A stretch of DNA of 64,000 nt, taken from assembly GCF_039654945.1 (NCBI RefSeq), contig NW_027361688.1:2852001-2916000 (forward strand), read 5' to 3'. Position 1 is the first letter of the stretch; every line of letters begins with the position of its first letter. The translations under genes and the position numbers were made by a program. Below are positions 1 through 60,519 of this stretch, in pieces. The DNA comes from Dendrobates tinctorius (lineage: Eukaryota). Under the pieces are notes generated by a model. The model worked only from the letters and a program-made list of their open reading frames with translations, was not told the origin of the DNA and did no database searches.

Positions 1-409
1 CGTTCAGCATGAAACTCAGGCGCAGAGCTGGGATTCGGGTGTAACTGACCCTGGGTCAGGTTTATTAACGGTGAAAGCAATGCAAAAGGAAATAAAACAT
101 AAAACAAATCCTTGCCTGTCCGGCACTAACTAAACAAAGTACAACCTAACTACCAACTGGCGGGCTTCTCCCGTCCAGCCAAACCACAGTTGCAGTGGGC
201 ACTGCTCTCACTCACGTGTGTCTCACACACAGACAGGCTCTCTGTGTTCCCAGGCTGAGACACTCACACAACCACCTTGCATCCTTTTATATCCACCTCC
301 CATTATTCATTAGCAAGCAGGTGCGATACTGACCAGACTAGGCCACATAGGAAAGGAATCTGGGCGAGATATACCTGCCCTCATCCACTATTCCCACATG
401 ATTCTCACA
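1..409 (-). mobile_element. Partial LTR (runs off the window edge)
   Basis: Minus strand starts TGTGAGAATC at 409, with a TATAAAA-like box near 284-290 and AATAAA at 61-66. It truncates the left arm of the adjacent palindromic MITE. Confidence 0.5.
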
Positions 410-15900: not shown

Positions 15901-16666
15901 CCGCCATAGACTTAGGGAACTAAAATAATGATAGGAGACAAGGGTGGACAGGAACATAGGGTTACGTGAACATTTCATTTTGCAAAACCACATCCAGGTC
16001 GAAGTCTCCATCATAGTTGACATCTTCTCCGACTGTGTCCTTTCCCCTTATCCTACCTCTTTATTCTACCTTCACCAAGGCTTGTTCAGGCTACAACTTG
16101 ACTGATTATCTCTAACACTGTGCTTGTTACGCCCCTCCAGGTACCCACAATTTTCTACCTGCGCTTCTTCTTGTATGCCATTTCTTATGTCTACTGTGTC
16201 TCCAAGCAATATGCCAACATCAGCTCCTCTTGTTAGCTCCTCATTGCCATGCACTATCTGCCCTACTGAATGTTCAGGCTGTAAGAGAAGAATGAGTGAA
16301 TGTCTCCTGGACAATTCCAAGGGGAACCACTGTTCTCATGGCATTCTTCGATGCGATGAATGATATGAAGCACAGAAATTTCCCTGCCCTCCATGATTAC
16401 ATTATAGACAGTTACATAAGTCAACCACTCCTCTTATATCATGCCCGTACTATTATAAGCACTGCTATGATGGTGGCAGTAAATTATTCCACCCTCATTA
16501 ACTTTTAGAATCGTATCGCAAAGTTCCGAAGATTTAAGAAGCCATCCTAAATTTGTAGCTATGAGCTATCACAACTTACCTCCTGAGGGGCATAGGTGCC
16601 CAGTCCCACCACCGGTATTTTGTGCCCATCGTTCAGTGTAAATCGTGAGTGTTTTGTCAGCGCCAT
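995..16666 (-). CDS. AKR1C-like aldo-keto reductase, gene A (exons 1-6; exons 7-9 lie beyond the left edge of the window)
   Basis: GT-AG exons: 16580-16666 ([29 protein letters not shown]), 15752-15919 (..[16 protein letters not shown]), 15446-15562 ([17 protein letters not shown]), 15207-15284, 13623-13745 (..[17 protein letters not shown]), 995-1104 ([18 protein letters not shown]). Sizes 87/168/117/78/123/110 match the AKR1C exon pattern. Tetrad D/Y/K/H present. Confidence 0.93.
2207..6829 (+). mobile_element. Non-autonomous LTR retrotransposon (LTRs 2207-3522 and 5501-6829; ~2-kb interior without gag/pol)
   Basis: Two highly similar ~1.32-kb TG...CA direct repeats. 4-bp TSD CAGG. PBS (C)GGCGTCACGAACAGGAT at 3526-3543 is complementary to the 3' end of a vertebrate tRNA-Ser(CGA). 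PPT AGGGGGGGAA at 5491-5500. No RT/IN motifs inside. Confidence 0.92.
6890..12620. repeat. ~20-bp minisatellite array (GCTGGGCTGTATTATACCAT / GCTGGGGGGCTATATACCAT), degenerate after ~11900
   Basis: Directly visible tandem units with higher-order blocks. Source of the long repetitive ORFs at 6871-12600. Confidence 0.97.
12663..13059. mobile_element. PIF/Harbinger-like MITE
   Basis: TIRs GGGTGTGTGCGC..GTTGC and GCAACGTGTGCACACACCC, with TTA / ATA flanks. Confidence 0.6.
14095..14730. repeat. ~75-80-bp minisatellite in intron 4 of gene A
   Basis: Tandem CACAGCTCACCTCCTCC..TGTACAATGACTGATAACACCTCTATATACAGTAGATAACACAGGAT..CATTCACAATAGGTGATGT, about 8 copies. Confidence 0.9.
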
Positions 16667-17493
16667 AATCCTGCTTGTGGCTCAGATCCGTCCCGAAGTT
16701 TCTTCTGTGAACATTGACTTGTTTTGGCTGAGCCCCAGGAGCACCGCCCCACCTCTTGGCTCTATTATAGTCCACTGACTAGCCGGCTCTCACTGAGCAT
16801 AGATTATTCTGGGTCACTGCTTGCCTGTGCCAGCTTCTGAGCAGTGGGAGAAAGCCTTATCTTCTACTTTTAAGAGAATGCCTTTTCATTTTGTTACTGG
16901 CTGGTACATACTGTATATTATAAATGTCATGTTTATTTATATACAGCTGCAATTATAATTATAACGACCTCCCCACCCATCTTCCATCATTGCAAATTCA
17001 GTAAACCAATGAAACGTGAATAATAAAATAGCTCAAGAGCACTACATTAACCAGTGATTTCTGCAAAAATGCCACTTTTACTGATTACTGCAGCCTCAGA
17101 ATTATACACCCCTTCATGACAAACATCTTTAGTACTAAATGGAGCTTCTCTGGCTGTTATAACTTGCAGCCCCTCTGGCTGTTGTGACCTGTTGCAGGTC
17201 TGGCAGCACTTTGGAAGAATTCTTAGACTGTTGTAAACAGTAAAAGTGGACTTTTGGGGTGAATTACCTGAAATCTAACACGTACTGAGTTGTTTCAAAG
17301 GCTCTTGATGCAGAAAGCAGAACATTTGTTATTTTTTTGGTAACAAACCTAATTTGAAATGGGGTGAGAGGTAGCAAGGAGCAGGAGACTGTCTGCCTTG
17401 AGGTCAGTGGTGTAACATGGAGAGATCAGTCTTATAATACTTAGGACTGAATAGGAGTTGCTTAAAGAAGAGTATTTTTAAGATAAGGCCAGG

Positions 17494-21704: not shown

Positions 21705-24700
21705 TGTTAGGGTCGGCGGAACGCACCAGATATAAATAATGGAAGGCGCGTTCGCCGCCCGGGGTCCACCGTGCGGTAGATGACAAGACCGCTGCTGGAC
21801 AATGGCAGATACGCTAGAAGTGCGATACAGCGCTCGGGTTAACGTCACCCGAGAGCCTGAGAGCGGACTCTGTTTAGTCACAGAGACGCCAAAGTATGAA
21901 CTAGACGTAAAGGCTGAACCTGTTAGCTGCACAGGTCAGCCGGCGTGTGGCGTCGCAGCCGCGAACACCAAAAGCTGCTACTACTGCAGCGCGGCCGTAA
22001 CTGAAGCCGCTAAGCGACGATGCCGGAGGAGCCGGGCACCGACGGACGCTAGTGTAGGTGAGGAAGGCTCAGTGGCGTGTAGCCTGCCACAATCTGGAGC
22101 TGACTAACCCAACATACTGTCACCATTCGTAATATCCGAGGGAAGGGGTTTCATAATAAGTCAGACACCAGTCCATGCATCCATCACCATACACACACAG
22201 CATAATATGCTACACTAGCGCATGGCCGAGCCGCCATGCAGGCTTTTTATAGCCATGCGCTTCCGGGACCTTCCAGTACTATAGGAAGGACCAATCAGAT
22301 CCGACATAGGACCTTCACATGTGACCCCTGCTCTCCACTGAGAGGACAAGTTGCGGGCATGCCCAGTCGCACGGCGCGAGGACTTAGCCTCTAGAGCAGT
22401 TCCCTGCAAAGCAGGTTGCGTTATCATTGCTGCACCAGAAGTGGCAGCAACATCCAGGCTCACAGAACGAGTCTGCGGGGAATGCCTGGCTCGCCGAGAT
22501 TGCTGAGCAGGAGTCCGAGCGGTCGGAGGAGAATGGGAGACCGCAGGATGTCTGGCTCTGGATTCCTGCTGTGCAGTGCCAGGAATCCGACGCCTAACAT
22601 TACCCCCCCTCCTAGGGCCTGAGCCTCACTGCGCTCAAAGGCCGCGATCAGGAGCGGTGCGTGAATATTTTCCACCGGCTCCCAGGTCCGAGCCTCGGGC
22701 CCATGACCCTTCCAGTCCACCAAATAAAATTTTTTGCCACGGACAAACCTGCGCCCCACGATGGCGTTAACCTCAAACTCATCAGACGATAAGTCTGATG
22801 ACCCGGCAGATGACTCAGAAAACCGGACCATGTGAACTGGTTTGAGGAGGGACACATGGAACACGTCCGAAATGGCCAAATGTGGAGGTAGAGCCAGGCG
22901 GTAGACCACCGAGCTAAGTCGCTCGAGGACCTTGAATGGTCCAATGTATCGCGGTGCGAACTTGGGAGACTCAACCCGCAGTTTAATGTTTCGGGTGGAG
23001 AGCCATACCATGTCGCCAGGGGAGAAGCTTGGCGCAGGCCGCCGATGCATGTCGGCGGACGCCCTCATCCTTTCTTTAGATGCCCGGATAGCATCCTGAG
23101 TGCGATCCCAAATGTCCCGGGCCTCCACTGCCCAGTCTGCCACCCTGGAGTCAGTGGAGGACACTGGCATCGGGACAGGGACACGTGGATGTTGGCCATA
23201 GTTTAGGAGAAAGGGCGTCTGACCAGTGGAATCAGCCACCGCATTGTTTAGGGCAAATTCTGCCCAAGGTAGCAAGGATGCCCAGTCATCCTGCCTGGCA
23301 GAGACAAAATGTCGTAAATAGGTGACCAAGGTCTGATTGGCTCTCTCGACCAAGCCATTCGTCTCGGGATGGTAAGCGGAGGATAGATTTAGCTCGATGC
23401 TGAGTAAACTGCAGAGCTCCCTCCAAAACCGAGACGCAAACTGGGGACCACGGTCACTCACGATTTTGTCCGGCATGCCATGTAGACGGAATACGTGTTT
23501 AATGAACAAGGTGCCCAGACCTCGAGCGGAAGGCAGGCGTGCGAGTGGCACCAGATGCACCATTTTGGAAAAATGGTCGGTGACCACCCAGATGACCGTA
23601 CTGCCACCAGACTTGGGCAGGCCAACTATGAAGTCCATGCCAACCATCTCCCATGGTCTATCCGCCACTGGCAGGGGAAACAACAGCCCCGCCGGCCTCT
23701 GTCTAGAGGGTCTGTTCCGAGCACACGAAACACATGCCTGCACGTACTCCTTGACATCTCGAGCCATATGTGGCCACCAATATGACCTTGCCAGGAGTTC
23801 GGCGGTCCGTTTTTTACCAAAATGGCCACCCACTCTGGAGGCATGTGCCCAGGCGAGGACCTCCGGCCGTAGCTGAGGAGGCACCAAGGTCTTGCCCGGT
23901 GGTACCGACTCGAGCGCAACTGGAGCCACGGTCGTAAAACTCTCCGGCGGGAGAATTAACCGAGGCTCAGCTTCTCCCTCCTCCACTGAGACCACTGAAC
24001 GTGAGAGAGCATCCGCACGGACGTTCTTCTCTCCAGAGAGGTAGTGGAGGGTGAAGCGGAATCGTGAGAAGAAGAGCGACCACCTGGCCTGACGGGAATT
24101 CAGGCGTTGGGCCGTCTGTAGATAGACCAGGTTTTTATGGTCCGTATATACCAGAAAGGGAAACCGGGCTCCCTCCAGGAGATGTCTCCATTCAGAAAAA
24201 GCCAACTTCATGGCTAGCAGCTCCCTGTCGCCGATGGAGTAATTTTTCTCCGCCGGTGAGAAGGTCTTGGAATAGAAGAAGCAGGGGTGCTTCCGACCTT
24301 GAGCATCCTTTTGATAAAGGACTGCTCCTGCACCGACGGAAGAAGCGTCTACCTCAAGGATAAACGGCTTATCCACATCGGGACGATGTAATATGGGAGC
24401 GCCAGCAAAATGTGATTTTATAGCCGAGAAGGCCTTGGAGACATGTTCTGACCAAGCATTGGGGTTAGCTCCTTTCTTGGTGAGAGCAACCAAAGGAGCC
24501 ACCAGTGTGGAAAAGTGTGGTATGAACTGGCGGTAGTAATTCACGAACCCCAAAAAGCGCTGCACCGCTTTGAGGGAATGGGGTTCCTGCCAGTCCATTA
24601 CCGCTTGTAGTTTGGCTGGATCCATGGCCAGCCCCTGGGCCGAGATGATATAGCCCAGGAACGGCAAGGACTCCTGCTCAAACTGGCACTTCTCCAGCTT

Positions 24701-27654
24701 GGCAAATAACGAGTTCGCCCGCAGACGGTCAAAGACCCTGCAGACGTCTCTCCGGTGGGTGGTCAAATCTGGCGAAAAGATGAGTATGTCATCCAGATAG
24801 ACCACCACCGAGGTAGAGAGCATGTCGCGGAAGACGTCGTTGACAAAATCTTGGAAGACAGCTGGGGCATTACAAAGGCCAAAGGGCATAACCAGGTATT
24901 CGTAATGGCCATCCCTGGTATTAAAAGCTGTCTTCCATTCGTCTCCTTCGCGAATGCGGATCAGGTTATATGCACCCCGCAGATCTAGTTTAGTAAAGAT
25001 CCGGGCCCCCCGCAACCTGTCAAATAACTCCGAGATCAACGGTAGGGGGTATTTGTTTTTAACCGTGATAGCATTGAGACCTCGGTAGTCGATGCAGGGG
25101 CGTAGCTCTCCGTTCTTCTTCTGTACGAAGAAGAATCCGGCACCAGCCGGTGACACCGATTTTCTGAAGAAACCCCTAGCCAGGTTCTCCCGGATATACT
25201 GGGACATAGCCTCCGTCTCAGGGAGTGATAAAGGGTAAACACAGCCTCGGGGAGGCTCTGTGCCTGGCAGGAGATCAATCGGGCAATCATAGGAACGGTG
25301 CGGTGGGAGCGTCTCCGCAGACTTCTTAGAGAAGACGTCCGCGTAATGGTGGTAGGGTTTGGGGAGCGAGGAGAGATCCGCAGGCACTTCTGTGGAAGCC
25401 ACCTGAACGCTGCCCCTCAGGCACCTTCCCTCACAGTCCTTGCCCCAGCCCAGTATCCTCCCTGAAGCCCAGTCAATATGCGGGGAGTGGTAACGAAGCC
25501 AGGGAACTCCGAGGAGCACCTGATCGATGCCATTGGGCATAATTAGCAGGGACAGAGTCTCCCGATGTGAGGGTGAAATAGAGAGTCCGAGTGGGGCTGT
25601 CTGATGGGTCACCTGAGATGGTAACGGTGCCCCATTTACCACCCTGATGGTCAGAGGTTGGGGGAGTATCACCAGAGGGATAGCGTGTCTCTGGGCAAAA
25701 GTCGAGGACATAAAGTTCCCCTCGGCCCCGGAATCCAGGGTGACCTCTGCCTCCCAGGAGGAGGACCCACTATCTAATGTACCCTGGAACACCGGTTTGG
25801 GTGAAAAGGGTCCCACCTTGGATTGACCACCACCTACGGCCACTGAACGTGGTCGTCTTTTCGGCCGCTGAGGGCATGTGCCAGCCGAGTGGCCCAACTG
25901 TCGGCACTGATAACAGCGCACAGAGGTTCGCATCGGACGCAACTTAGTGCCGGTGCGAGACACCTCCATAGGCTCAGAGGAGAGGTGCTCCTGTGCGGGA
26001 AATTTCAGCGGCTCAGTAAAGGTGGGAGCCAAATTAACCCTACGTTTGGATTGCGCTCGTTCCAACCCGCGCTCCGTGTAGCGGAGATCAATGCGGGTGG
26101 AAACGGCGATCAACTCCTCCAAACTGGTGGGAATCTCCCTAGTAGCTAGAGCATCTTTTACGTGCTCAGCCAGGCCTCTCCAAAACACCGGGACCAACAC
26201 TTTGTCCGGCCACTCTAACTCGGAAGCCAGTGTCTGAAACTGGACAGCATGATGGCTAACCGAAAGTGACCCTTGTGTTAAAGATAACAGTTGGAGAGCC
26301 GTATCGTGGGTGACCCGTGGTCCCAAGAAGACTTGCTTCAGAGCCGCGAGGAACTGAGCAGCCCCCTGTACCACGGGATCACCACGTTCCCACAATGGCG
26401 TGGCCCACTGTAATGCCCGGCCAGACAACAGAGAGACAATAAATCCCACCTTAGCCCGCTCCGTAGGGAACCGTGCAGCCAGCAACTCCAGCTGGATGGA
26501 GCACTGACTAACGAATCCCCTACAGGAGGCACTATCACCCGAAAACTTATCGGGGAGCGGGAGGCGAGACATTGTCGGCAGGGGCAAAAGTGTGGGCGCA
26601 CGTGAGACAGCCTCAGCGACTGTCTGAGCAGCAGCTAGCGCAGCATTCGCAGCTGAGATGGTGCTCTCAATAGCCGTCAACCTGCTCTCCAGCTGCCGAA
26701 TGTAGCGCTGCAGCTGCTGCACGTCTGCCATTGCCAGCCAGACCCGGGCGCTAGTGTAATGTTAGGGTCGGCGGAACGCACCAGATATAAATAATGGAAG
26801 GCGCGTTCGCCGCCCGGGGTCCACCGTGCGGTAGATGACAAGACCGCTGCTGGACAATGGCAGATACGCTAGAAGTGCGATACAGCGCTCGGGTTAACGT
26901 CACCCGAGAGCCTGAGAGCGGACTCTGTTTAGTCACAGAGACGCCAAAGTATGAACTAGACGTAAAGGCTGAACCTGTTAGCTGCACAGGTCAGCCGGCG
27001 TGTGGCGTCGCAGCCGCGAACACCAAAAGCTGCTACTACTGCAACGCGGCCGTAACTGAAGCCGCTAAGCGACGATGCCGGAGGAGCCAGGCACCGACGG
27101 ACGCTAGTGTAGGTGAGGAAGGCTCAGTGGCGTGTAGCCTGCCACAATCTGGAGCTGACTAACCCAACATACTGTCACCATTCGTAATATCCGAGGGAAG
27201 GGGTTTCATAATAAGTCAGACACCAGTCCATGCATCCATCACCATACACACACAGCATAATATGCTACACTAGCGCATGGCCGAGCCACCATGCAGGCTT
27301 TTTATAGCCATGCGCTTCCGGGACCTTCCAGTACTATAGGAAGGACCAATCAGATCCGACATAGGACCTTCACATGTGACCCCTGCTCTCCACTGAGAGG
27401 ACAAGTTGCGGGCATGCCCAGTCGCACGGCGCGAGGACTTAGCCTCTAGAGCAGTTCCCTGCAAAGCAGGTTGCGTTATCATTGCTGCACCAGAAGTGGC
27501 AGCAACATCCAGGCTCACAGAACAAGTCTGCGGGGAATGCCTGGTTCGCCGAGATTGCTGAGCAGGAGTCCGAGCGGTCAGAGGAGAATGGGAGACCGCA
27601 GGATGTCTGGCTCTGGATTCCTGGTGTGCAGTGCCAGGAATCCGACGCCTCACA
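21705..27654 (-). mobile_element. Full-length Ty3/Gypsy chromovirus (Tf1/sushi lineage) LTR retrotransposon
   Basis: 895-bp LTRs at 26760-27654 (5') and 21705-22599 (3'), differing at about 8 positions by eye. 5-bp TSD ACTAC. PPT (AGGAGGGGGGGTAA on minus) at 22600-22613. Intact ORF inside. Confidence 0.97.
22460..26731 (-). CDS. Gag-Pol polyprotein, 1423 aa (gag, CCHC knuckle, protease, RT, RNase H, integrase, chromodomain)
   Basis: PEG10/RTL1-like gag (LPDKFSGD..CRGFVSQC). CYQCRQLGHSAGTC zinc knuckle. LDSGA protease. RT LRPCIDYRGLN..MPFGLCNAP..YLDD. RNase H VDAS..RELLA..TDHKNL..ADALSR. Integrase HHCC and DDE. Chromodomain FEVNAIV..YLVDWKGHGPEARTWEP. Confidence 0.97.
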   Translation of the reverse strand: MADVQQLQRYIRQLESRLTAIESTISAANAALAAAQTVAEAVSRAPTLLPLPTMSRLPLPDKFSGDSASCRGFVSQCSIQLELLAARFPTERAKVGFIVSLLSGRALQWATPLWERGDPVVQGAAQFLAALKQVFLGPRVTHDTALQLLSLTQGSLSVSHHAVQFQTLASELEWPDKVLVPVFWRGLAEHVKDALATREIPTSLEELIAVSTRIDLRYTERGLERAQSKRRVNLAPTFTEPLKFPAQEHLSSEPMEVSRTGTKLRPMRTSVRCYQCRQLGHSAGTCPQRPKRRPRSVAVGGGQSKVGPFSPKPVFQGTLDSGSSSWEAEVTLDSGAEGNFMSSTFAQRHAIPLVILPQPLTIRVVNGAPLPSQVTHQTAPLGLSISPSHRETLSLLIMPNGIDQVLLGVPWLRYHSPHIDWASGRILGWGKDCEGRCLRGSVQVASTEVPADLSSLPKPYHHYADVFSKKSAETLPPHRSYDCPIDLLPGTEPPRGCVYPLSLPETEAMSQYIRENLARGFFRKSVSPAGAGFFFVQKKNGELRPCIDYRGLNAITVKNKYPLPLISELFDRLRGARIFTKLDLRGAYNLIRIREGDEWKTAFNTRDGHYEYLVMPFGLCNAPAVFQDFVNDVFRDMLSTSVVVYLDDILIFSPDLTTHRRDVCRVFDRLRANSLFAKLEKCQFEQESLPFLGYIISAQGLAMDPAKLQAVMDWQEPHSLKAVQRFLGFVNYYRQFIPHFSTLVAPLVALTKKGANPNAWSEHVSKAFSAIKSHFAGAPILHRPDVDKPFILEVDASSVGAGAVLYQKDAQGRKHPCFFYSKTFSPAEKNYSIGDRELLAMKLAFSEWRHLLEGARFPFLVYTDHKNLVYLQTAQRLNSRQARWSLFFSRFRFTLHYLSGEKNVRADALSRSVVSVEEGEAEPRLILPPESFTTVAPVALESVPPGKTLVPPQLRPEVLAWAHASRVGGHFGKKRTAELLARSYWWPHMARDVKEYVQACVSCARNRPSRQRPAGLLFPLPVADRPWEMVGMDFIVGLPKSGGSTVIWVVTDHFSKMVHLVPLARLPSARGLGTLFIKHVFRLHGMPDKIVSDRGPQFASRFWRELCSLLSIELNLSSAYHPETNGLVERANQTLVTYLRHFVSARQDDWASLLPWAEFALNNAVADSTGQTPFLLNYGQHPRVPVPMPVSSTDSRVADWAVEARDIWDRTQDAIRASKERMRASADMHRRPAPSFSPGDMVWLSTRNIKLRVESPKFAPRYIGPFKVLERLSSVVYRLALPPHLAISDVFHVSLLKPVHMVRFSESSAGSSDLSSDEFEVNAIVGRRFVRGKKFYLVDWKGHGPEARTWEPVENIHAPLLIAAFERSEAQALGGGVMLGVGFLALHSRNPEPDILRSPILLRPLGLLLSNLGEPGIPRRLVL

Positions 27655-29429: not shown

Positions 29430-32400
29430 TTAGTATTCTTCATGGAATGGAAATTTGGGGTGATCCTTCCACCTGCAAAATCAGAAAGAATAAAGTTACA
29501 CACCAAGCATACACATCTCGTGACATTGTGTTGCAAAATCATTTTTTTATGTTTCCAAGCTGATAATCTTGCGCCATAGATTTAATAATATGTCGAACCG
29601 AGAGCAAAAATAAGGGAAGAGAAATCTGGATTCGCCAGCCAGATTTTTTTCCACTTTCTTCATTATGTAAGATATCTGGCAGAAACCTTATACTTCTCAC
29701 AGTCACAAAAGATGTTCTCATTCCTGCAGAAGATCTGGGTGGAGGAACGCCAAAAACGTCCTCTCCGCGTCCCTTCTTTACCCCCGTCGCCCTACTTTCT
29801 CTTAGACCAATCCAGGTGATCTATGGCGGTAATATTTAGGCTGTCCTCCACTTACTTGTGATCCACATAGCGTCTGTTCTGGTTCAGTTCATTCAGAGGT
29901 TTCATTTCCTCCTCGCTCAACTGGAATTTAAAAACCTAAAATTGCAATCACCAAAGACAGAAGTCAACTTTTCCGAATGCAAAAAGGACGATTGAAAGGT
30001 CACAATTCTCGAAATATGGCAAGAAACTAAATTTGTCAAATCTATCATTTTATGTAGACAGCTCCCATGCAGAGTTATGTGCGTTACATGGCTACAAATC
30101 ACAAACCCTGTGTAAATTATCAAGAAAATAGATTAGAGCAGGGTATGCTAATGGCACGGAGACACACCGCTACAGTGCACAGCTCCACGGCTCTTGTTGA
30201 CGGCTGTATGTACGTCTGGGTCATTGTGACCTCGATGTGGTCTGAACCTAATCATCTTTTTGAGAATTTGAATGGAAACTAGACCCCACAAAACAACTTT
30301 ATACGGCTCAGTTTTGTAGTGATGTCGAGGAATTCTTCGGCAGATAACGATTTAAAGTGTAACCGTCGTTTTAATCTTTATTTTGTAAATCCATTATACA
30401 TATGAAAATAAGAAACTTTGTCATATATTTTATCAGGGAAATCTGTTTCTATCTTTCTGCTCCTGGACTAATCTTTCATTCTCAATTCAGGAATAAAATC
30501 TGTATTCAGTGGAGACAGGAGATAGGAGATGATGTTTGGTGCTTGTAAAATTTTATGTAGAGGGGAGGAGCTTAAGGCGGACACAGGGACACAGACATTC
30601 TAGGAAGCAGGCTAGAGGCAGATACCAACATTCTAGGGAGGAGCTGGAGGCTGACACAGACATTCTAAGGAGGAGATAGAGGCAGACATAGACATTCTAG
30701 GGAGGAGCAAGAGGAGGACATAGACATTCTAGGGAGGAGCTAGAGGCAGATACAGACATTCTAAGGAGGAGATAGAGGCAGACAGACATTCTAGGGAGGA
30801 GCTAGAGGCAGACACAGACATTCTAGGGAGGAGCTAGAGGAACACACATACATTCTAGAGAGGAGCTAGAGGAACACACATACATTCTAGAGAGGAGCTA
30901 GAGGAACACACATACATTCTAGAGAGGAGCAAGAGGAGGACACAGACATTCTAGGGAGGAGATAGAGGCAGACAGACATTCTAAGGAGGAGGTAGAGGCA
31001 GACACAGACATTCTAGTGAGGAGCTGGAGGCAGACACAGACATTCTAGGGAGGAGCTAGAGGCTGACAGACATTCTAGGGAGGAGCCAACATCACGAAAC
31101 AATCACTGACCTCAGGGAGACCAGTCAAAGAAAACACTGCAGAAGCCGGCAAAGGCGCTCAATCAGTGAAATCCTAGGTACATTGCTCCTTGGGAAATAC
31201 GAATATGCAAATAAAGTCCATGGAGCCTCACTTAAGAGTCTCAAACACGGGACTAGCCAGATCTTTCTCCAGGGAAGGACCCAGCCAAGGAGTGGCTCCT
31301 TTCGGAAACCACCATTACCACCATATTAAGTGGCCCTTTGAGTCAATATCCAGCTCTTTACGAGTTTACAGATATGACAAGGGAAATACCAAGGCCAGGT
31401 ATCCATCCACAGACAGCTGTTTCGGGGGTGTTGCCCCTCATCAGTGTGGAGTAGGATTCTGGCTAGGTGGGAGCAATGCCTAGTAGACCAACACCACGAA
31501 ACAAATCACTGACCTCAGGGAGACCAGTCAAAGAAAACACTGCGGCAGCCGGCAAAGGCGCTCAATCAGTGAAATCCTAGGTGCATTGCTCCCTGGGAAA
31601 TACGAATCCTACTCCACACTGATGAGGGGCAACACCCCGAAACAGCTGTCTGTGGATGGATACCTGGCCTTGGTATTTCCCTTGTCATATCTGTAAACTT
31701 GTAAAGAGCTGGATATTGACTCAAAGGGCCACTTAATATGGTGGTAATGGTGGTTTCCGAAAGGAGCCACTCCTTGGCTGGGTCCTTCCCTGGAGGAAGA
31801 TCTGGCTAGTTCCATGTTTGAGACTCTTAAATGAGGCTCCACGGACTTTATTTGCATATTCGTATTTCCCAGGGAGCAATGCACCTAGGATTTCACTGAT
31901 TGAGCGCCTTTGCCGGCTGCCGCAGTGTTTTCTTTGACTGGTCTCCCTGAGGTCAGTGATTGTTTTGTGATGTTGGTCTACTAGGCATTGCTCCCACCTA
32001 GCCAGAATCCTACTCCACACTGATGAGGGGCAACACCATGAAACAGCTGTCTGTGGATAGATACCTGGCCTTGGTATTTCCCTTGTCATATCTGTAAACT
32101 CGTAAAGAGCTGGATATTGACTCAAAGGGCCGCTTAATATGGTGGTAATGGTGGTTTCCGAAAGGAGCCACTCCTTGGCTGGGTCCTTCCCTGGAGAAAG
32201 ATCTGGCTAGTCCCGTGTTTGAGACTCTTAAATGAGGCTCCACGGACTTTATTTGCATATTCTAGGGAGGAGCTAGAGGAACACAAAGACATTCTAGGGA
32301 GGAGAAAGAGGAGGACATATACATTGTAGGGAGGAGCTAGAAGCAGACAGACATTCTAGGGAGGAGCTAGAGGAAGACACAGACATTCTAGGGAGAAGCT

Positions 32401-35400
32401 AGAGGAAGACACAGAGATTCTAGTGAGGAGTTAGAGGCAGACACAGACATTCTAGGGAGGAGTTAGAGGCAGGCACAGACATTCTAGGGAGGAGCTGGAG
32501 ACAGACAGACATTCTAGGGAGGAGCTAGAGGCACATACAGACATTCTAGGGAGGAGCTAGAGGCACATACAGACATTCTAGGGAGGAGCTAGAGGCAGAT
32601 ACAGACATTCTAGGGATGAGCTAGAGGAAGACAGACATTCTAGGGAGGAGCTAGAAGAACACAGAGACATTCTAGGGAGGAGTTAGAGACAGACAGACAT
32701 TCTAGGCAGGGGCTAGAGGCAGACACAGACATTCTAGAGAAGAGCTAGACGAAGACACATGTATTCAATTTCCACTGAAACGATAGATACACTTCTTCAT
32801 AGAACTTTATCAGCACCAACTGTCAACTCTGATCTCAGTAATGGGAATAACTGTAATTCACTAAAGAAAGATTAAACCTGAGAATTGAGAATTTTGATAA
32901 TGAAAGATCAGTCCAGATCATACTGTTCATTTCTGAAAAAAAATAATTTACTCTTTAAGAAATAGATTCCTCTTGTAAAATAAAAACGCCTTGTACTCAT
33001 CTCCCGAAGTGGTGAAGTTCCAGCGATGTCATTTAAGCCCTGCAAGCAGCCCAATAGCGGCCTATGAATGGTCTCAGGGTTCACGAGACAATGTCATGTG
33101 AGTTCTGATATTGCTCTGTGGGAGGTGGGAAAATGGTATTATTATTTTGTATGGGGGATTACATTTAAAAAGGAATTATCCACATAGTGGACAACCCCTT
33201 TAACTGCGAATATCTCAGGCTGGGTAGAGAACATTGTAAAACCCTTGGTGAGGCGCACGCTTGGTTTTAGCTAGGATACCATGAACATTTTCTGCAAACT
33301 CACAGCCCTGCATCCACTCCCTGAGGACACAATATTCGCCAACATGAGATTGTGCTTGCTGTATGCCAATACTTCCTTTAAAAAAAATAATCAGGTCACA
33401 GAGCAGAGCACATCCAGCAACTAATAAGGTCTGTGTGCCATCATAATTACTTCTCCTTTTGGGAAAAAAATTTATATGGGCATCATCATGGCAGCAAAAT
33501 GTTTCCACGATATGCCAACTGGTTTATGGCTAAACTAGAGGAGGACATTTTATCATATTTCAAGTATCTCCAGAACAACCACAACTCTCATATAAACAGC
33601 CACTGAACGTAAGTAATCTCCTTGTCAGACACGTCCTCTCATCACCATCAGAGCCGGGCACATTCCCCTGTAAAAGTAAAAAATTCAGGACTTGTACCCA
33701 TATTTTATCAACAATCACAGTCCACACACCCAACACAAGACTATAAGATCCTTCTCATATACATCCTCCAATGTGGTGTACATGATACAGTGTACAAGGT
33801 GACCCCTGAAGAAGCCTATACTGGCGAAACTAAACAAAAACTACAAATGAGGAGGAATCGTTAAGGAATTAGTTGGACACATCTGATTGATGTTTTCAAA
33901 ACCCATGGGTCAAGTATTGAGAAACAAACAAACCATACATGCCGTAAACTAAAACATGTGAATAATATGGGTCCTGTCTTTTATTGGACGTTCAACCTTG
34001 AAGAGTCTTACAGTACAGAAGGGTGTGGAGAATTTCCAAGGAAAACGGAAAAAACTTCAAATATTCAGAGGAGGAGACTTGGGGCAAACAAGTCCATATA
34101 GTGGATCCGTCATCTGAGAATGGTCACTTTCTTTTTGTGTTGGGTACCATTTTGGTTGACCGATAGGGTTGTTTTTGATGGTGGAAAAGCTTATGTATGA
34201 ACACAAAGATGGAGACATGTTGCAGTAAACCATCTTCACTGGACCACCTTCTAACTTCTCAAGATTCTGACTCTCTTACCTCAAGATTCTGCTTGATCCT
34301 TTCAGGATTAAAACTCTTAGCAAGAACTACAATCCCTCTCTGCAGCAAGTGTCTCATTGCCACCTGGGCAGGAGTTCGGCCATGTTTTTTCGCAATTGCA
34401 TTGAGCACAGGGTCCTCCAGCAGGAATGGAGCAGTCTGGTCAATCCTGAAAGAGTGAAGTTACAACAAAGACAATCGTAGACAGCAGGCTAAATTAAGGA
34501 GGCTACACTAAAGGCGACACGGTGCCTTCTGGTTCCGCTTTGGTATGAAGCCAAGGATTGGAGAAAAAGGCTACAAGTTTTTGGTCAGCAGTCATAAATG
34601 TGACTATGGATTGATCAATTCTCAGAGATTATTTCCTTCAAGAAGGTGATATGTCACTTCTTACCAGTTCACATCACGAGTCGAGCCCAGCACCCCGAAT
34701 GCCACAAGGACTATGTTGTGCGACTTGCAGAACTCCAGGAGCTTAGACTGATTCATGTAGATGTGACACTCAACCTGAAAATGGACAAAACGTCTCTCAT
34801 GTGTGGGGAGGCACAGGGTAGAGATCCAGGAGAGACAGAATATTTCTACATTACCTGGTTGCACACAGGTTTGTATCTCAGTCCCGGCATATTAAGAATA
34901 AGTTCCAGTTGCTTGTGGTTGAAGTTGGAGACGCCTATAGATCTGACCAGTCCGGATTGCTTACAATCCTCCATAGCCTAAAAGTAAAAAAAAAAATAAT
35001 GTGTCGCCCATTGCTGAATTATAAAAGGAGTGAGGGATTGAAAATTCCAAATTGTCTATACAGCCCCTATACAAACCAATCTGTCTCCATGGCAACAGAC
35101 TACAAACACATTTTGTGTAGTCGGATCACATTTCCCTTTGTCTGTTCTTACGTCTGGCTACCATACATTCATTAGACTTAAATGACGTTAGATTGGAAGA
35201 GATGGAAGAGAACTTGACTGTACGATCAGATCAGAAAGGGTTGGTGTTATGTTACCATGGAAACACATGGGCATGTAAAGGAGCTGTATGCACAAAACGG
35301 TACAAGATTTTTAATGAAGGATGGTTACAAAATTTCTTCATTTTTCATTTAAGATGCCTTGGAACAGAAGGAAAAGGAATGTAAAGTTGAGAATAGACTT

Positions 35401-38046
35401 CGAGTCTATATGTATCTATATAGTGTTCATTCTTACAGCAGCGTTTAAAAGTTTGGGCACCCCTGGTCAAAATGACTGTTATTGTGATCAGTTAAGCAAG
35501 TTGAAGATGAAATGATTTGTACAAGGCCTAAAGTTACAGATGACACACTTCCTTTGTATTTTAGTCATATATATATGTATATAAATATATAATTACAAAA
35601 AGGAAAATGAGCCGATACAAATATTTGGGCACTCTTGAAGATTTGAGGGCTCAGATAACTTTGACCAAGGTCTCAGACTTTAATTAGCCCGTTAGGGTTA
35701 TGGCTCGTTCACTGTCATCATTAATAAGGGCCTGGTGATGCAAATTTCCCAGCTATATAAAAACACAGCCTCCTCTAGCCCTGTGCCAAAAACAGCAGCC
35801 ATGGGTTCTTCTAAGCAGCTGCCTAGCCCTCTGAAAATGGTGGAGGCCCACAATGCAGGAGAAGGATATAAGAAGATAGCAAAGTGTTGTCAAGTTGCCC
35901 TTTCCTCAATTCGAAATGTATTTAAGAAATGGCAGTTACCAGGAACAGTGGAGGTCAAGATAAGATCTGGAAGACCAAGCAAATATTTCTGTGAGAGCTG
36001 CTCGTAGGAATGCTAGAGAGGCAAATTGCTTTACTGCAAAGGACGTTCAGAAAGATATAGCAGACTCTAGAGTTGTGGTACATTGTTCTACTGTTCAGAG
36101 ACAGCTGCACAAATATGGCCTTTATGAAATATTCATAAGAAAACCTCTCCTGTGACCTTGCAAAAAATACAGTTTAAAAAGTATGCAAAAGAACATCTAA
36201 ACAAGCCTGTAGCATTTTGGCAACAAGTCATATGGACAGATCAGGATAAAATAGAACTCCTTGGCCACAATGATCAAAGATATGTGTGGAGAAAAAAGGG
36301 CACAGAATTTCAGGAAAAGAACATCTCACCAACCATTAAGCATGGGGGTGGATCAATCATGCTTTAGGGTTGTGTTGCAGCCAATGGCACGGGGAACATT
36401 TCACAGGAATGGATTCAATGGAATTTCAACAAATTCTTGTTGCAAATATAACACCATCTGTGAAAAAGCTGAAGGTGAAAAGAGGAAGAGGATGGCTTCT
36501 ACAAATGGATAATGATCCTAAACACACCAAAATCCACAATAGACGACATCAAAAGGCGCAAGCTGAAGGATTTACAATGGCCCTCACAGTCCCCTGATCT
36601 GAACATCATTTAAAATCTGTGGCCAGACCTCAAAATAGCAGAGGATGGAAGACGACCCGGGAATCTCACAGAACTGGAGGAATCCTCCAAGGAAGAAAGG
36701 AGGAAAATCCCTCAAACACAAGTTATAAGAATATTGTCTGGCTGCAAAAAGTGTTTACAAGCTGTGAGGCTTGCAAAAGGGGGCGCTAATAGGTACTAAC
36801 CATGTAGGGTGTCCAAACTTTTTTTACCTTAAATACAAAGAAAATCTATTTAGGCCTTTTAGAGATCATGTCACCTTCAACTTGCTTAACTTGTCACAAT
36901 AACATTAATTTTGACCAGGGCTGCCCAAACTTTTAGACCCAAGGAATATGATAAAAACACAATAAGATGGGCATTAAACATTTGATTTCAGCATGTATGG
37001 TGGAGAAATTATCACTCAAGTAGAAATAAACCAATGCTAGAGCCACTCGTAAATGCTAATGTCACCAGTGTTAAATAGGACGTCTAGGTGGCTTCAAAGA
37101 CTGGTTGATTCCTCTACAAAGTTTAGTTCCCTGTTTTGGGATTTTAGGATAAGTCTCCATACCTTCCAGGTGTCTCGAATATCAGTATTGTGATAAATCA
37201 CTTTTCCATTTTCATCTGTTGGAAGTAAATCATCACCGGGCTTAAAAACGAGAGAAAGAAAGTAATGGAAATTTAGTAGACCAGAAGACAAGCTGGATCG
37301 TCCTTCTAGCCTCACAGAAAATTTAGGCTGTGACCTGGTTATAAAATGTTGTTGGGGGTTATATACTGACCTTGAGTTCGACAGGAGTATGAATAAGAAA
37401 GAGGTCTAAGTAATTCAGACCTAGGTTCTTCAAGGACTTCTCAAGAGCAGGACGGACCAACTCCGGGGACTGATAGGTGCTCCACAGCTAGAAGAGTAGA
37501 AAACCCCAAAAATGTAAACTAAATTACAGGCTATTTGAGGGTCTTTGGAACGGAGGATGATGGATAACAGTGGGGTGGCCATTAGTGGTTGCCACCGGGC
37601 ATCTGTAACTTGTTATAAAACACCAAGATAAGGGTTGAAGAAGACAACTCAACTAATGTCGCAAGCTTTACCAAAACCAGTGCCTCTACATGGAAAGAAT
37701 ATCAAAGCAAATACCTTGGTAGTGCAGAAGACGTCTTCTCTCTTGACCGTCCCATCTGCGATCTTCGCATTAATCGCTCTTCCTACCTCCACCTCATTGC
37801 AGTATACGAATGCCGAGTCGATGTGTTGATATCCAACCTCAAGGGCGATCTTCACGGACTCTTCCACCATAGATTTGGGGAACTATAAGCAAGGTCATAA
37901 AATAATGACACTGTGCAATTCATGGCTCAGACAGTAACCCTAGACTTGTAGCCATTTACCTCCTGTGGGGCATATGTACCGAGTCCAACCACTGGTATCT
38001 TGTGCCCATCATTCAGTGTAATTCGTGAATGTTTTGTGAGCGCCAT
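29430..38046 (-). CDS. AKR1C-like aldo-keto reductase, gene B (complete, 9 exons, 323 aa)
   Basis: Exons 37960-38046, 37715-37882, 37371-37487, 37163-37240, 34855-34977, 34665-34774, 34280-34445, 29856-29935, 29430-29472. All GT-AG, open frame of 972 nt ending [13 protein letters not shown]. Motifs [38 protein letters not shown] on minus at 29334-29339. Confidence 0.95.
31406..31450 (-). ncRNA. Type I minimal hammerhead ribozyme (sense to gene B pre-mRNA)
   Basis: Minus strand reads TCCACA CTGATGA GGGG CAACAC CCCC GAAAC AGCT GTC^ TGTGGA: stem I, CUGAUGA core, stem II, GAAA, palindromic stem III, GUC cleavage triplet. Confidence 0.88.
31613..31656 (+). ncRNA. Type I minimal hammerhead ribozyme
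   Basis: TCCACA CTGATGA GGGG CAACA CCCC GAAAC AGCT GTC^ TGTGGA, with predicted cleavage after C31650. Confidence 0.9.
32014..32057 (+). ncRNA. Type I hammerhead ribozyme copy with damaged stem II
   Basis: Same motif but the stem II 3' strand is CCAT instead of CCCC. Cleavage site C32051 is 401 nt from the previous one. Confidence 0.75.
33685..33862 (+). mobile_element. Decayed Penelope-like GIY-YIG endonuclease fragment
   Basis: Translates across frameshifts as ..TQDYKI../[30 protein letters not shown], matching the PLE pattern NVVYxIxC..YxGETxQxL. Confidence 0.65.
35436..36934 (+). mobile_element. Decayed Tc1/mariner DNA transposon in intron 4 of gene B
   Basis: TA|CAG left end. Long TIRs (AAAAGTTTGGGCACCCCTGGTCAAAAT..TTAAGCAAGTTGAAG vs its reverse complement at ~36875-36934). 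Broken transposase: [58 protein letters not shown]. Confidence 0.93.
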
Positions 38047-45920: not shown

Positions 45921-52880
<6,960 letters not shown>

Positions 52881-59980: not shown

Positions 59981-60519
59981 GGTGCAGTGTGTCCAGTGTC
60001 TTCTTCTGCACGGCTGCTCTTCCTATAACTCGTGTGCTGTTTTTCATGCGTTCTCCCTCCCTCTATCATGAAACCTCAGCCGGGAGTTGGAGTCCTTCCA
60101 ACTAATCCCTCTGAACAAAGCCCTGAGCGTCTTTGTGAGGTCCAGTCAGGGGAGAAGCTGTTTCGACACAAGTGTTGACGAGCTGCACAGGCTTTTTTCT
60201 CTTCGGTTCTCTGGTTTTGGAAGCAAAACAAGAGTTGTTTTCTGACAAACTTTCGGAAGGGAAGCCATGTCAAAAATTTACCACCCCCCCCCGGGCGTGG
60301 TCAAAAAATTCTGGAGCAGTGTAAAAAGATGAAGAAGTTACGATTAGTGAGTGAAACCCTATAAAGGGGTATTTCAGCCTAAACAAGTTATAACCCAGAT
60401 GATAACTCTTCGATTGGCGCGAGTCCCACTAGTGTTGAACTGGAGTACCTGGGGAAGAAAAAAGGAGACAGTGCCGGACTCATCTTTACCATTTGGTCTA
60501 TATTGGATTGGGTGAACTG

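What the first reader, a model, noticed from the sequence alone, without database searches (positions are those of the whole stretch)
31086..32262. Tandem ~401-nt units each with a hammerhead ribozyme: candidate frog retrozyme (self-cleaving, possibly circular RNA)
Seen: a non-coding unit repeats ~2.9 times. Each copy contains TCCACA-CTGATGA-GGGG-loop-CCCC-GAAAC-AGCT-GTC-TGTGGA, and the two plus-strand cleavage sites (31650, 32051) are 401 nt apart. Established: this is the minimal type I hammerhead, with a palindromic stem III that works as a dimer, found in Penelope-like element repeats, newt satellite 2 and non-LTR retrozymes that yield monomeric linear and circular RNAs. Inference: this is a copy of an anuran non-autonomous ribozyme retroelement family with a ~400-nt monomer, mobilised by a Penelope RT. 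Whether this family is already described cannot be determined here.
Basis: partly seen in the sequence, partly recalled or inferred. Interest (0 to 1): 0.9.

Follow-up and report, generated by a model that had tools for sequence, protein, structure and literature searches.

The report
Decayed frog hammerhead retrozyme insertion
This is an old, non-coding copy of a self-cutting-RNA repeat, a hammerhead "retrozyme" of a kind already described in amphibians, pasted head-to-head into a short-repeat tract inside a gene intron; it is ordinary except that its shape records how it was inserted.

Summary
The repeat is real: 1,177 nt (31086-32262) built from a 401-nt non-coding unit, 2.94 units in all, with three hammerhead motifs (0 expected by chance). 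It is not a plain tandem. 522 nt (1.3 units) lie inverted, head-to-head with 659 nt (1.64 units) in direct orientation. The whole sits inside a 32-bp minisatellite, bounded by an 11-15-bp target duplication.

Two motifs (31406-31450 minus, 31613-31656 plus) align end-to-end to Rfam Hammerhead_1. They score 20 bits, below the gathering score of 34. The third (32014-32057) has a broken stem II and no match. The motif folds as a catalytic hammerhead only as a dimer, through an 8-bp palindromic stem III.

The family is highly repeated in DNA contigs of the source species and occurs in three other coded organisms. No ORF has a domain, and the window holds no Penelope RT.

The insertion geometry fits priming of reverse transcription from both target strands on a multimeric RNA, as shown in vitro for a Penelope enzyme.

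The kind is known: amphibian non-LTR retrozymes linked to Penelope pseudo-LTRs. This copy is about 1.5% decayed, lies in intron 7 of an AKR1-like gene and folds into a roughly 400-bp hairpin, so it is probably inert. Circular RNA is untested. The scan has noted similar insertions elsewhere in this genome.

The parts
30588..31086 (.). Left part of the 32-bp minisatellite (consensus ATTCTAGGGAGGAGCTAGAGGCAGACACAGAC) that was the insertion target
   Evidence: Tandem Repeats Finder: period 32, 15.8 copies, 86% matches
31072..31086 (.). Left copy of the candidate target-site duplication, ATTCTAGGGAGGAGC
   Evidence: Read from the sequence. Removing one copy restores the 32-bp phase of the minisatellite.
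31086..31607 (-). Inverted arm M: unit positions 208-401 then 1-326 (1.3 units). Its 3' end (position 326) abuts the left flank.
   Evidence: BLAST of the unit: 31607->31412 at 96.9% and 31411->31086 at 96.6%; inverted-repeat pairs I1-I4
31406..31450 (-). Hammerhead motif M. Core and stems are intact and loop 2 has one extra C. It is in the sense orientation of the host AKR gene.
   Evidence: Pattern match; RF00163 model positions 1-45, 19.8 bits, E 0.0067 on 81 nt
31604..31607 (.). Head-to-head junction: the GAAT is shared by both arms (4-nt microhomology)
   Evidence: The BLAST ranges overlap at 31604-31607; alignment
31604..32262 (+). Direct arm P: unit positions 355-401, 1-401, 1-211 (1.64 units). 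Its 3' end (ATTC, positions 208-211) overlaps the satellite's ATTC.
   Evidence: BLAST; direct-repeat family D1 with spacing 401 at 97%
31613..31656 (+). Hammerhead motif P1, intact. The predicted cut is after C31650.
   Evidence: RF00163 model positions 1-45, 20.0 bits, E 0.0059 on 81 nt; the dimer fold gives a double hammerhead
32014..32057 (+). Hammerhead motif P2, degenerate. The stem II 3' strand has changed from CCCC to CCAT.
   Evidence: no RF00163 match at E<=1; its fold is no better than shuffles, z = -0.19
32259..32273 (.). Right copy of the candidate target-site duplication. Its first 4 nt (ATTC) could equally belong to the element.
32259..32759 (.). Right part of the 32-bp minisatellite
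   Evidence: Tandem Repeats Finder: period 32, 15.9 copies
34277..34453 (-). Exon 7 of AKR1-like gene B, upstream of the intron that holds the element
   Evidence: tblastn of paralogue peptides: 74.6% over 59 aa, E 1e-26
29861..29941 (-). Exon 8 of AKR1-like gene B, downstream of the intron
   Evidence: tblastn of paralogue peptides: 59% over 27 aa, E 6.5e-07

Best explanation
This is one old retrotransposed copy of a non-autonomous, non-coding, hammerhead-bearing repeat family with a 401-nt monomer. That makes it a vertebrate 'non-LTR retrozyme', the ORF-less tandem form of a Penelope-like pseudo-LTR.

Proposed mechanism (inferred):
1. A multimeric RNA of at least 2.9 units, or a rolling-circle copy of a unit circle, was reverse-transcribed at a staggered break in a 32-bp minisatellite.
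2. The top-strand 3' end primed at unit position 326, the family's usual 3' terminus, and gave arm M.
3. The bottom-strand 3' end (...GAAT) primed internally at AUUC (positions 208-211) and gave arm P.
4. Synthesis of M stopped where P had been primed.
5. The two cDNA 3' ends (GAAT and ATTC) annealed through 4 nt.
6. The product is a head-to-head insertion inside an 11-15-bp target duplication.

A Penelope-type RT/GIY-YIG enzyme, which cleaves and extends both strands in vitro, is the likely driver.

In family RNAs the hammerheads would act as dimers, through the 8-bp ACAGCUGU stem III, to release 401-nt monomers.

This copy has since decayed by about 1.5%. One ribozyme is broken. Any transcript of it folds into a duplex of about 400 bp, so it is most likely inert as a ribozyme or circle source.
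For: Shown:
- Unit coordinates of the arms: M = 208..326 and P = 355..211. The flank end of P (208-211) and the inner end of M (208) coincide to the nucleotide. About 7/401 would be expected by chance (my estimate).
- A 4-nt overlap is present at both joints.
- The duplicated ATTCTAGGGAGGAGC restores the satellite phase when one copy is removed.
- The hammerhead core and helices align over the whole RF00163 model.
- The dimer minimum-energy fold is a double hammerhead at -37.9 kcal/mol, against 2 x -16.2 for monomers whose own best fold is non-catalytic.
- No ORF longer than 130 aa, no Pfam domain and no protein relative. The only RT found among the long ORFs scanned is a Ty3/Gypsy element about 4.4 kb away.
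- 4,242 DNA contig pieces of the source species match the unit. Copies occur in four coded organisms. At least six contigs end at unit positions 312-326 with unrelated flanks, which suggests a defined 3' terminus.

From papers:
- Penelope-like insertions are partial tandems, often with an adjacent inverted 5'-truncated copy and a bias for microsatellite targets (PMC8557442).
- A Poseidon enzyme cleaves and extends both strands and starts RT at internal sites (PMC11167929).
- Frog retrozymes are sister to Penelope pseudo-LTRs (10.64898/2026.07.22.740005).
- As in that Poseidon element, the ATG inside CUGAUGA lies 26 nt (after the codon) upstream of the cut site (read from the sequence).
Against: - The hammerhead scores are below Rfam's gathering score (20 against 34 bits), and no cleavage was tested.
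- No Penelope RT lies in the window, and the family's link to a particular autonomous element was not tested.
- The RNA evidence is weak. All runs were contigs, and the 'RNA' labels of most are guesses.
- The target duplication lies in a tandem repeat, so a 17-nt target deletion would fit as well.
- A copy in another species seems to share both termini. That points to defined RT start sites rather than chance microhomology, so the L1-style 'twin priming' detail may be wrong even if dual-strand priming is right.
- Private differences between units cannot distinguish a circle template from a multimer template.
Confidence: 0.78

Rival explanations
1. A plain direct 2.9-unit array was inserted or amplified first. 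One part was later inverted at the DNA level, by a fold-back or template switch during replication or by break repair.
For: The two arms are contiguous in unit coordinates (P ends at 211 and M starts at 208). That is also what inverting one segment of a direct array gives. A 4-nt microhomology at the junction is common in repair events.
Against: One inversion breakpoint would have to fall exactly on the boundary between element and flank. The scan's unchecked notes and the Penelope literature report the same head-to-head form inside one target duplication as a regular insertion product (PMC8557442). Another inverted joint of this family is seen in a different species (joint 31891/32172).
Confidence: 0.08
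2. It is not an independent retrozyme. It is a heavily 5'-truncated insertion of an autonomous Penelope-like element, of which only pseudo-LTR sequence was copied.
For: Penelope insertions are mostly 5'-truncated and carry the hammerhead in the pseudo-LTR (PMC8557442, PMC11167929). The hammerhead has the same layout as in Poseidon of Anolis, with the ATG in the core 26 nt before the cut.
Against: Three successive 401-nt periods contain no coding sequence between them. A pLTR-ORF-pLTR template would place several kb of ORF between two hammerheads. An ORF-less tandem of pseudo-LTR units is what the 2026 preprint defines as a non-LTR retrozyme, so the difference is partly one of naming.
Confidence: 0.1
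3. It is ordinary satellite DNA spread by unequal crossing-over. The hammerhead-like motif is a fossil or a chance match with no ribozyme activity and no RNA intermediate.
For: The Rfam score is below threshold. The fold z-scores of single motifs are modest, at -2.1 and -1.9. The circular unit fold is not exceptional, z = -1.45. Eight of nine frog retrozyme dimers tested in the 2026 preprint did not cleave in vitro.
Against: The element has sharp borders inside an unrelated minisatellite, with a target duplication. Dispersed copies have unrelated flanks and a shared 3' end. All invariant core bases and the three helices are present, and the dimer fold is the canonical double hammerhead.
Confidence: 0.04

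Closest known systems
Metazoan non-LTR retrozymes (Cervera & de la Peña 2020, PMC7229834), including axolotl Rtz_330/353 and newt satellite 2
   Same: Type I hammerhead inside a non-coding repeat of 150-450 bp. A weak stem III with a palindromic tetraloop, so that it works as a dimer. Multicopy and dispersed. Target duplications longer than 4 bp. GC below 50% (48% here).
   Different: This locus is not a head-to-tail array but two arms head-to-head. Expression and circles are not shown for this family. The monomer (401 nt) is at the upper end of the reported range. The sequence family was not compared with theirs.
Frog (Xenopus) non-LTR retrozyme families derived from Penelope pseudo-LTRs (Li, Clavereau & Pollet, bioRxiv 10.64898/2026.07.22.740005)
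   Same: An anuran host, an ORF-less unit with a type I hammerhead, and an inferred dependence on Penelope-like elements. The paper also records intronic copies (about 43% of copies).
   Different: The species here is coded and unknown to me. No sequence of their 57 families was available, and their supplementary primer tables hold no matching motif. Membership of one of their families is therefore untested. They do not describe head-to-head geometry.
Penelope-like element insertions (Poseidon/Neptune; PMC8557442, PMC11167929)
   Same: A partial tandem plus an adjacent inverted 5'-truncated copy within one insertion. A short-repeat target. The hammerhead has the ATG of CUGAUGA 26 nt before the cut. 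Both target strands appear to have been used as primers.
   Different: There is no RT/GIY-YIG ORF. The two 3' termini are about 115 nt apart (positions 209 and 324), not the published 30-40-nt 'tail'. The family repeats at 401 nt with no coding body.
L1 twin priming (5' inversions of LINE-1 insertions; from my own knowledge, Ostertag & Kazazian 2001)
   Same: The inverted and direct segments are adjacent in RNA coordinates. There is microhomology at the inversion joint. A single target duplication encloses both.
   Different: The template is a multimer of a 401-nt unit and has no poly(A). The same termini seem to recur in another species, which twin priming by chance microhomology would not predict.

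Membership tests
Hammerhead ribozyme, type I (Rfam RF00163) | Invariant core: CUGAUGA, GAAA, and a cleavage triplet NUH (here GUC) | tested here: met
   All three motifs carry CTGATGA...GAAAC...GTC (sequence)
Hammerhead ribozyme, type I (Rfam RF00163) | Three helices around the core, with stem I open-ended | tested here: met
   Full-length alignment to the model structure, positions 1-45 of 45, for two motifs. Stem I is 6 bp, stem II is 4 bp, and stem III is 2 bp as a monomer or 8 bp as a dimer. The third motif has a broken stem II.
Hammerhead ribozyme, type I (Rfam RF00163) | Score at or above Rfam's gathering threshold (34 bits) | tested here: not met
   20.0 and 19.8 bits; nothing on the whole window
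Hammerhead ribozyme, type I (Rfam RF00163) | Self-cleavage at the predicted site | not testable with these tools
   One 107-nt contig of a run guessed to be RNA ends exactly at 32051. That is a single observation and is not evidence on its own.
Metazoan non-LTR retrozyme | Type I hammerhead repeated at a period of 150-450 bp in head-to-tail copies | tested here: met
   The period is 401 within each arm, at 1.64 and 1.3 units. Only arm P contains two hammerheads in tandem.
Metazoan non-LTR retrozyme | Non-autonomous: no coding capacity and no LTR, PBS or PPT | tested here: met
   ORFs are 130 aa or shorter, have no Pfam hit and have no protein relatives. PBS and PPT were not specifically searched for.
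Metazoan non-LTR retrozyme | Dispersed multicopy family with target duplications | tested here: met
   4,242 contig pieces in a DNA run of the source species, with many unrelated flanks. An 11-15-bp duplication here and an 11-bp one in another species.
Metazoan non-LTR retrozyme | Expressed as unit-length linear and circular RNA | tested here: inconclusive
   Contigs are present in runs guessed to be RNA, and an amphibian metatranscriptome holds a related hammerhead core. There were no raw reads, no ends and no circle-specific signal.
Penelope-like element (autonomous) | ORF with a telomerase-like RT and a GIY-YIG endonuclease | tested here: not met
   No such ORF lies in the element. Among the ten ORFs scanned in the window, the only RT is Ty3/Gypsy.
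Penelope-like insertion grammar | Partial tandem with an adjacent inverted 5'-truncated copy inside one insertion | tested here: met
   compared with the description in PMC8557442
Penelope-like insertion grammar | A 30-40-bp 'tail' at one end, from two adjacent RT start sites | tested here: inconclusive
   The two termini are at about positions 209 and 326, which are 115 nt apart. The 28 nt at positions 327-354 are missing at the head-to-head junction of the two arms. Neither feature is a clear tail.

The most novel reading that the evidence does not exclude
The two insertion termini, at unit positions of about 209 and about 324, are not accidents of microhomology. They are two defined internal RT-initiation sites on the retrozyme RNA, used on opposite target strands. 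A second insertion in another frog species shows the same two ends inside its own 11-bp duplication. If so, this family would be a natural, non-autonomous in vivo footprint of the dual-strand, internally initiated reverse transcription so far shown only in vitro for one lizard Penelope enzyme. It would also define the cis signals that let retrozymes hijack that enzyme.
Probability: 0.25. Interest if true: 0.6.

Novelty: new member of a known kind. Interest (0 to 1): 0.33.

Why it matters
The element adds little that is new in kind. Hammerhead retrozymes in amphibians, their action as dimers and their kinship with Penelope pseudo-LTRs are all published.

Its value is as a clean, fully resolved insertion. 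Both arms, both joints and the target duplication can be read to the nucleotide, and they fit reverse transcription primed from both target strands on a multimeric template. A census of such junctions and termini across this genome could test how retrozymes are mobilised, which the recent papers call an open question.

For annotation, it is a caution. An 'intronic sense hammerhead' here is buried in a duplex of about 400 bp and should not be read as a regulatory ribozyme.

Tried and rejected
- Rfam at gathering score on the whole window gave nothing, and at E<=10 on 1.35 kb only noise. The hammerhead appears only when 81-nt stretches are searched.
- Tandem Repeats Finder reports no 401-nt array. 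The copies are too few and one arm is inverted.
- A scan of metagenome contigs for the family's hammerhead pattern gave 0 hits.
- I tried to fetch other copies through the unit's 130-aa ORF with a protein search. There were no hits.
- A look-up of earlier findings by sequence was blank.
- The supplementary tables of the 2026 frog preprint hold primers only, with no matching motif, so family identity is untested.
- The 'skips ~1200' joints in DNA contigs looked like an empty allele. They carry extra letters and are other satellite arrays, so I rejected them as evidence of polymorphism.
- The circular fold of the unit is not unusually stable, z = -1.45, so it gives no support for a rod-like circle.
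- Depth differences along the unit were not used, because contig depth cannot rank parts.
The window has no N.
Full report
**What is there**

Positions 31086-32262 (1,177 nt) interrupt a 32-bp minisatellite. The minisatellite runs 30588-31086 and 32259-32759 (Tandem Repeats Finder).

The inserted DNA is built from one 401-nt unit. I number the unit from the base after the predicted cleavage site, so position 1 is 31651. BLAST of that unit against the window gives five pieces and nothing elsewhere in the 64 kb:

| Strand | Unit positions | Window coordinates | Identity |
|---|---|---|---|
| plus | 355-401 | 31604-31650 | 95.7% |
| plus | 1-401 | 31651-32051 | 100% (the query itself) |
| plus | 1-211 | 32052-32262 | 97.2% |
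| minus | 208-401 | 31607->31412 | 96.9% |
| minus | 1-326 | 31411->31086 | 96.6% |

- Arm M is inverted: 522 nt, 1.3 units.
- Arm P is direct: 659 nt, 1.64 units.

The repeat finder shows the same thing. It reports direct families at spacings of 401 and 403, and four inverted pairs of up to 342 nt at 97-98% complementarity.

**The ribozyme motif**

The pattern CTGATGA-N8-24-GAAACAGCTGTC occurs three times, against 0.00 expected in shuffles. The matches are at 31412-31444 (minus), 31619-31650 (plus) and 32020-32051 (plus).

The layout is:
- Stem I: UCCACA/UGUGGA. It can be extended by 3 bp past a bulged C.
- Core: CUGAUGA.
- Stem II: GGGG-CAACA-CCCC.
- GAAA.
- Stem III: A-U and C-G around the palindromic loop AGCU.
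- GUC, followed by the cut.

Rfam results:
- Nothing at gathering score on the whole window.
- Nothing at E<=10 on 1.35 kb.
- On 81-nt stretches, the two intact motifs align over the whole Hammerhead_1 model (positions 1-45 of 45). They score 20.0 and 19.8 bits, E about 0.006, against a gathering score of 34.
- The third motif has CCCC changed to CCAT in stem II. It gives no match and folds no better than shuffles.

As a monomer, the minimum-energy fold is not the catalytic one: the CUG of the core pairs with the CAG of stem III. Two copies together fold into the classical double hammerhead, with an 8-bp intermolecular stem III (ACAGCUGU), at -37.9 kcal/mol against 2 x -16.2. This is the behaviour published for newt, axolotl and Penelope hammerheads (PMC7229834).

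**Non-coding and multicopy**

- The longest ORFs in the element are 130 aa or shorter. None has a Pfam domain, and the longest has no protein relative.
- Among the window's long ORFs that I scanned, the only reverse transcriptase is an intact Ty3/Gypsy polyprotein at 22460-26731.
- Laying public contigs on the locus gave 4,242 matching pieces in a DNA run of the source species.
- Matches also occur in three other coded organisms and in an amphibian metatranscriptome. The last covers only a related hammerhead core.
- At least six contigs of two species stop matching at unit positions 312-326 and continue into unrelated sequence. This suggests that the family has a defined 3' terminus there.
- All runs were assembled contigs. 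Transcription, RNA ends and circles could therefore not be shown.
- One 107-nt contig ends exactly at 32051, the predicted cut. This is a single observation and I give it no weight.

**How it got there**

The geometry is precise.

- Arm M's 3' end (position 326) abuts the left flank, with 1 nt of overlap.
- Arm P's 3' end is ATTC (positions 208-211). It overlaps the satellite's ATTC.
- The inner end of M is position 208, the same ATTC. It is joined to the inner end of P (position 355, GAAT) through the 4 shared bases at 31604-31607.
- The 15-mer ATTCTAGGGAGGAGC stands on both sides, at 31072-31086 and 32259-32273. Removing one copy restores the 32-bp phase of the satellite. The target duplication is therefore 11-15 bp. 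A 17-nt target deletion cannot be excluded.

Read as RNA, P followed by M is one continuous multimer, 355...211/208...326. This is what priming from both strands of a staggered break predicts:
1. One cDNA starts at the 3' terminus (326) from the top strand.
2. The other starts from the bottom-strand end ...GAAT, annealed at AUUC.
3. The first cDNA stops where the second began.
4. The two cDNA ends (GAAT and ATTC) anneal.

I estimate the chance that the two coordinates coincide within a few bases at roughly 7/401.

The literature fits this reading:
- Penelope-like insertions are partial tandems, often with an adjacent inverted 5'-truncated copy and a bias for microsatellites (PMC8557442).
- A purified Poseidon enzyme cleaves and extends both strands and starts reverse transcription at internal RNA sites (PMC11167929).
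- In that element the ORF's ATG is the one inside CUGAUGA, and the cut lies 26 nt after the codon. The spacing is identical here (read).

One observation complicates the simple 'twin priming by microhomology' picture. In another species, two contigs put the same 11-mer (ATGTACTTCAG) on both sides of a copy whose ends lie at 31090 and 32260. These are the same two termini, in a different target. If this holds, the termini are set by the RNA, as two RT start sites about 115 nt apart, and not by chance annealing. This is my 'novel case'.

**State of this copy**

Where three copies overlap, every difference is private to one copy:

| Segment | Private differences |
|---|---|
| P_a (355-401) | 0 |
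| P_b (1-401) | 7 |
| P_c (1-211) | 2 |
| M_a (208-401) | 3 |
| M_b (1-326) | 6 |

That is 18 differences in 1,181 nt, or about 1.5%. Six of the 16 substitutions are at CpG. The copy is old. The data cannot distinguish a circle template from a multimer template.

The element lies in intron 7 of an AKR1-like gene on the minus strand. I mapped exons 1-9 at 38046-29433 by tblastn with peptides of the three paralogues in the window. Exon 7 is at 34277-34453 and exon 8 at 29861-29941. This confirms another note of the scan.

Only arm M's hammerhead is in the sense of the gene. In the predicted fold of the whole locus on either strand (about -930 kcal/mol), that motif is paired over 42-43 of its 45 bases with the antisense of the degenerate P2 motif. 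Only P1 sits in the roughly 250-nt apical loop.

- On the host strand there is a single buried hammerhead with no dimer partner.
- On the other strand there is one intact and one broken motif.

Release of a 401-nt monomer from this locus is therefore unlikely. A long intronic duplex RNA is the more likely product (inference).

**Comparison with what is known**

The kind is established:
- Type I hammerheads in 150-450-bp repeats are non-LTR retrozymes. [quoted passage not shown]
- A 2026 preprint found them in all seven amphibians sampled. It defined 57 Xenopus families and placed them as sisters of Penelope pseudo-LTRs. It also notes that about 43% of copies are intronic. Only one of nine dimers cleaved in vitro (10.64898/2026.07.22.740005).

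I could not compare sequences with those families, so the exact family name is open.

The scan's own notes list many hammerhead-bearing and Penelope head-to-head insertions with 13-14-bp duplications elsewhere in this genome. One note reads this very locus as twin priming. I reached the same geometry independently.

**Verdict**

- The interpretation as a frog hammerhead retroelement copy is well supported.
- Penelope mobilisation is supported only indirectly.
- Circular RNA is untested, and unlikely for this copy.
- This is a new member of a known kind. Its modest interest lies in the cleanly readable insertion junctions and the possibly recurrent termini.

Noticed in passing
window 22460-26731 (-), with repeated ends near 22476 and 27531: A full-length Ty3/Gypsy retrotransposon with an uninterrupted 1,423-aa gag-protease-RT-RNaseH-integrase-chromodomain ORF. 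The same peptide stretch appears at both ends, which points to LTRs. It looks young.
   Followed up: partly
window ~13482-16681 (-), 29433-38046 (-), ~47007-52877 (+), ~59142-60022 (-): A cluster of four AKR1-like (aldo-keto reductase) paralogues in mixed orientation. The hammerhead element lies in intron 7 of the second.
   Followed up: partly
window 6871-12893 (+): A block with long overlapping ORFs in all three plus frames (up to 1,010 aa), strong AT skew and repeated peptide words (e.g. ...[12 protein letters not shown]...). It has no Pfam hit and looks like a long tandem repeat rather than a gene.
   Followed up: no
window 31090 and 32260 (contigs of run X17, organism D): In another species, a copy of this family has the same two termini as here and is flanked on both sides by ATGTACTTCAG. 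That looks like an independent insertion with an 11-bp duplication, so the termini recur.
   Followed up: partly
window 31945-32051 (107-nt contig of run X17): A contig from a run guessed to be RNA ends exactly at the predicted hammerhead cleavage site. This is a single case, and a branch in the assembly graph could give the same result.
   Followed up: no
window 31664 (loose ends): Ten DNA contigs share the hammerhead and the first ~14 nt after the cut, then continue with a different sequence (ATGTTTTGGCATAGGTGGTTT). Other families, or a parent element, therefore carry the same ribozyme module.
   Followed up: no
window 30588-31086 and 32259-32759: A 32-bp minisatellite (ATTCTAGGGAGGAGCTAGAGGCAGACACAGAC) of about 1 kb. 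Related arrays occur elsewhere in the genome (joints). It served as the insertion target, in line with the reported Penelope bias for short repeats.
   Followed up: partly
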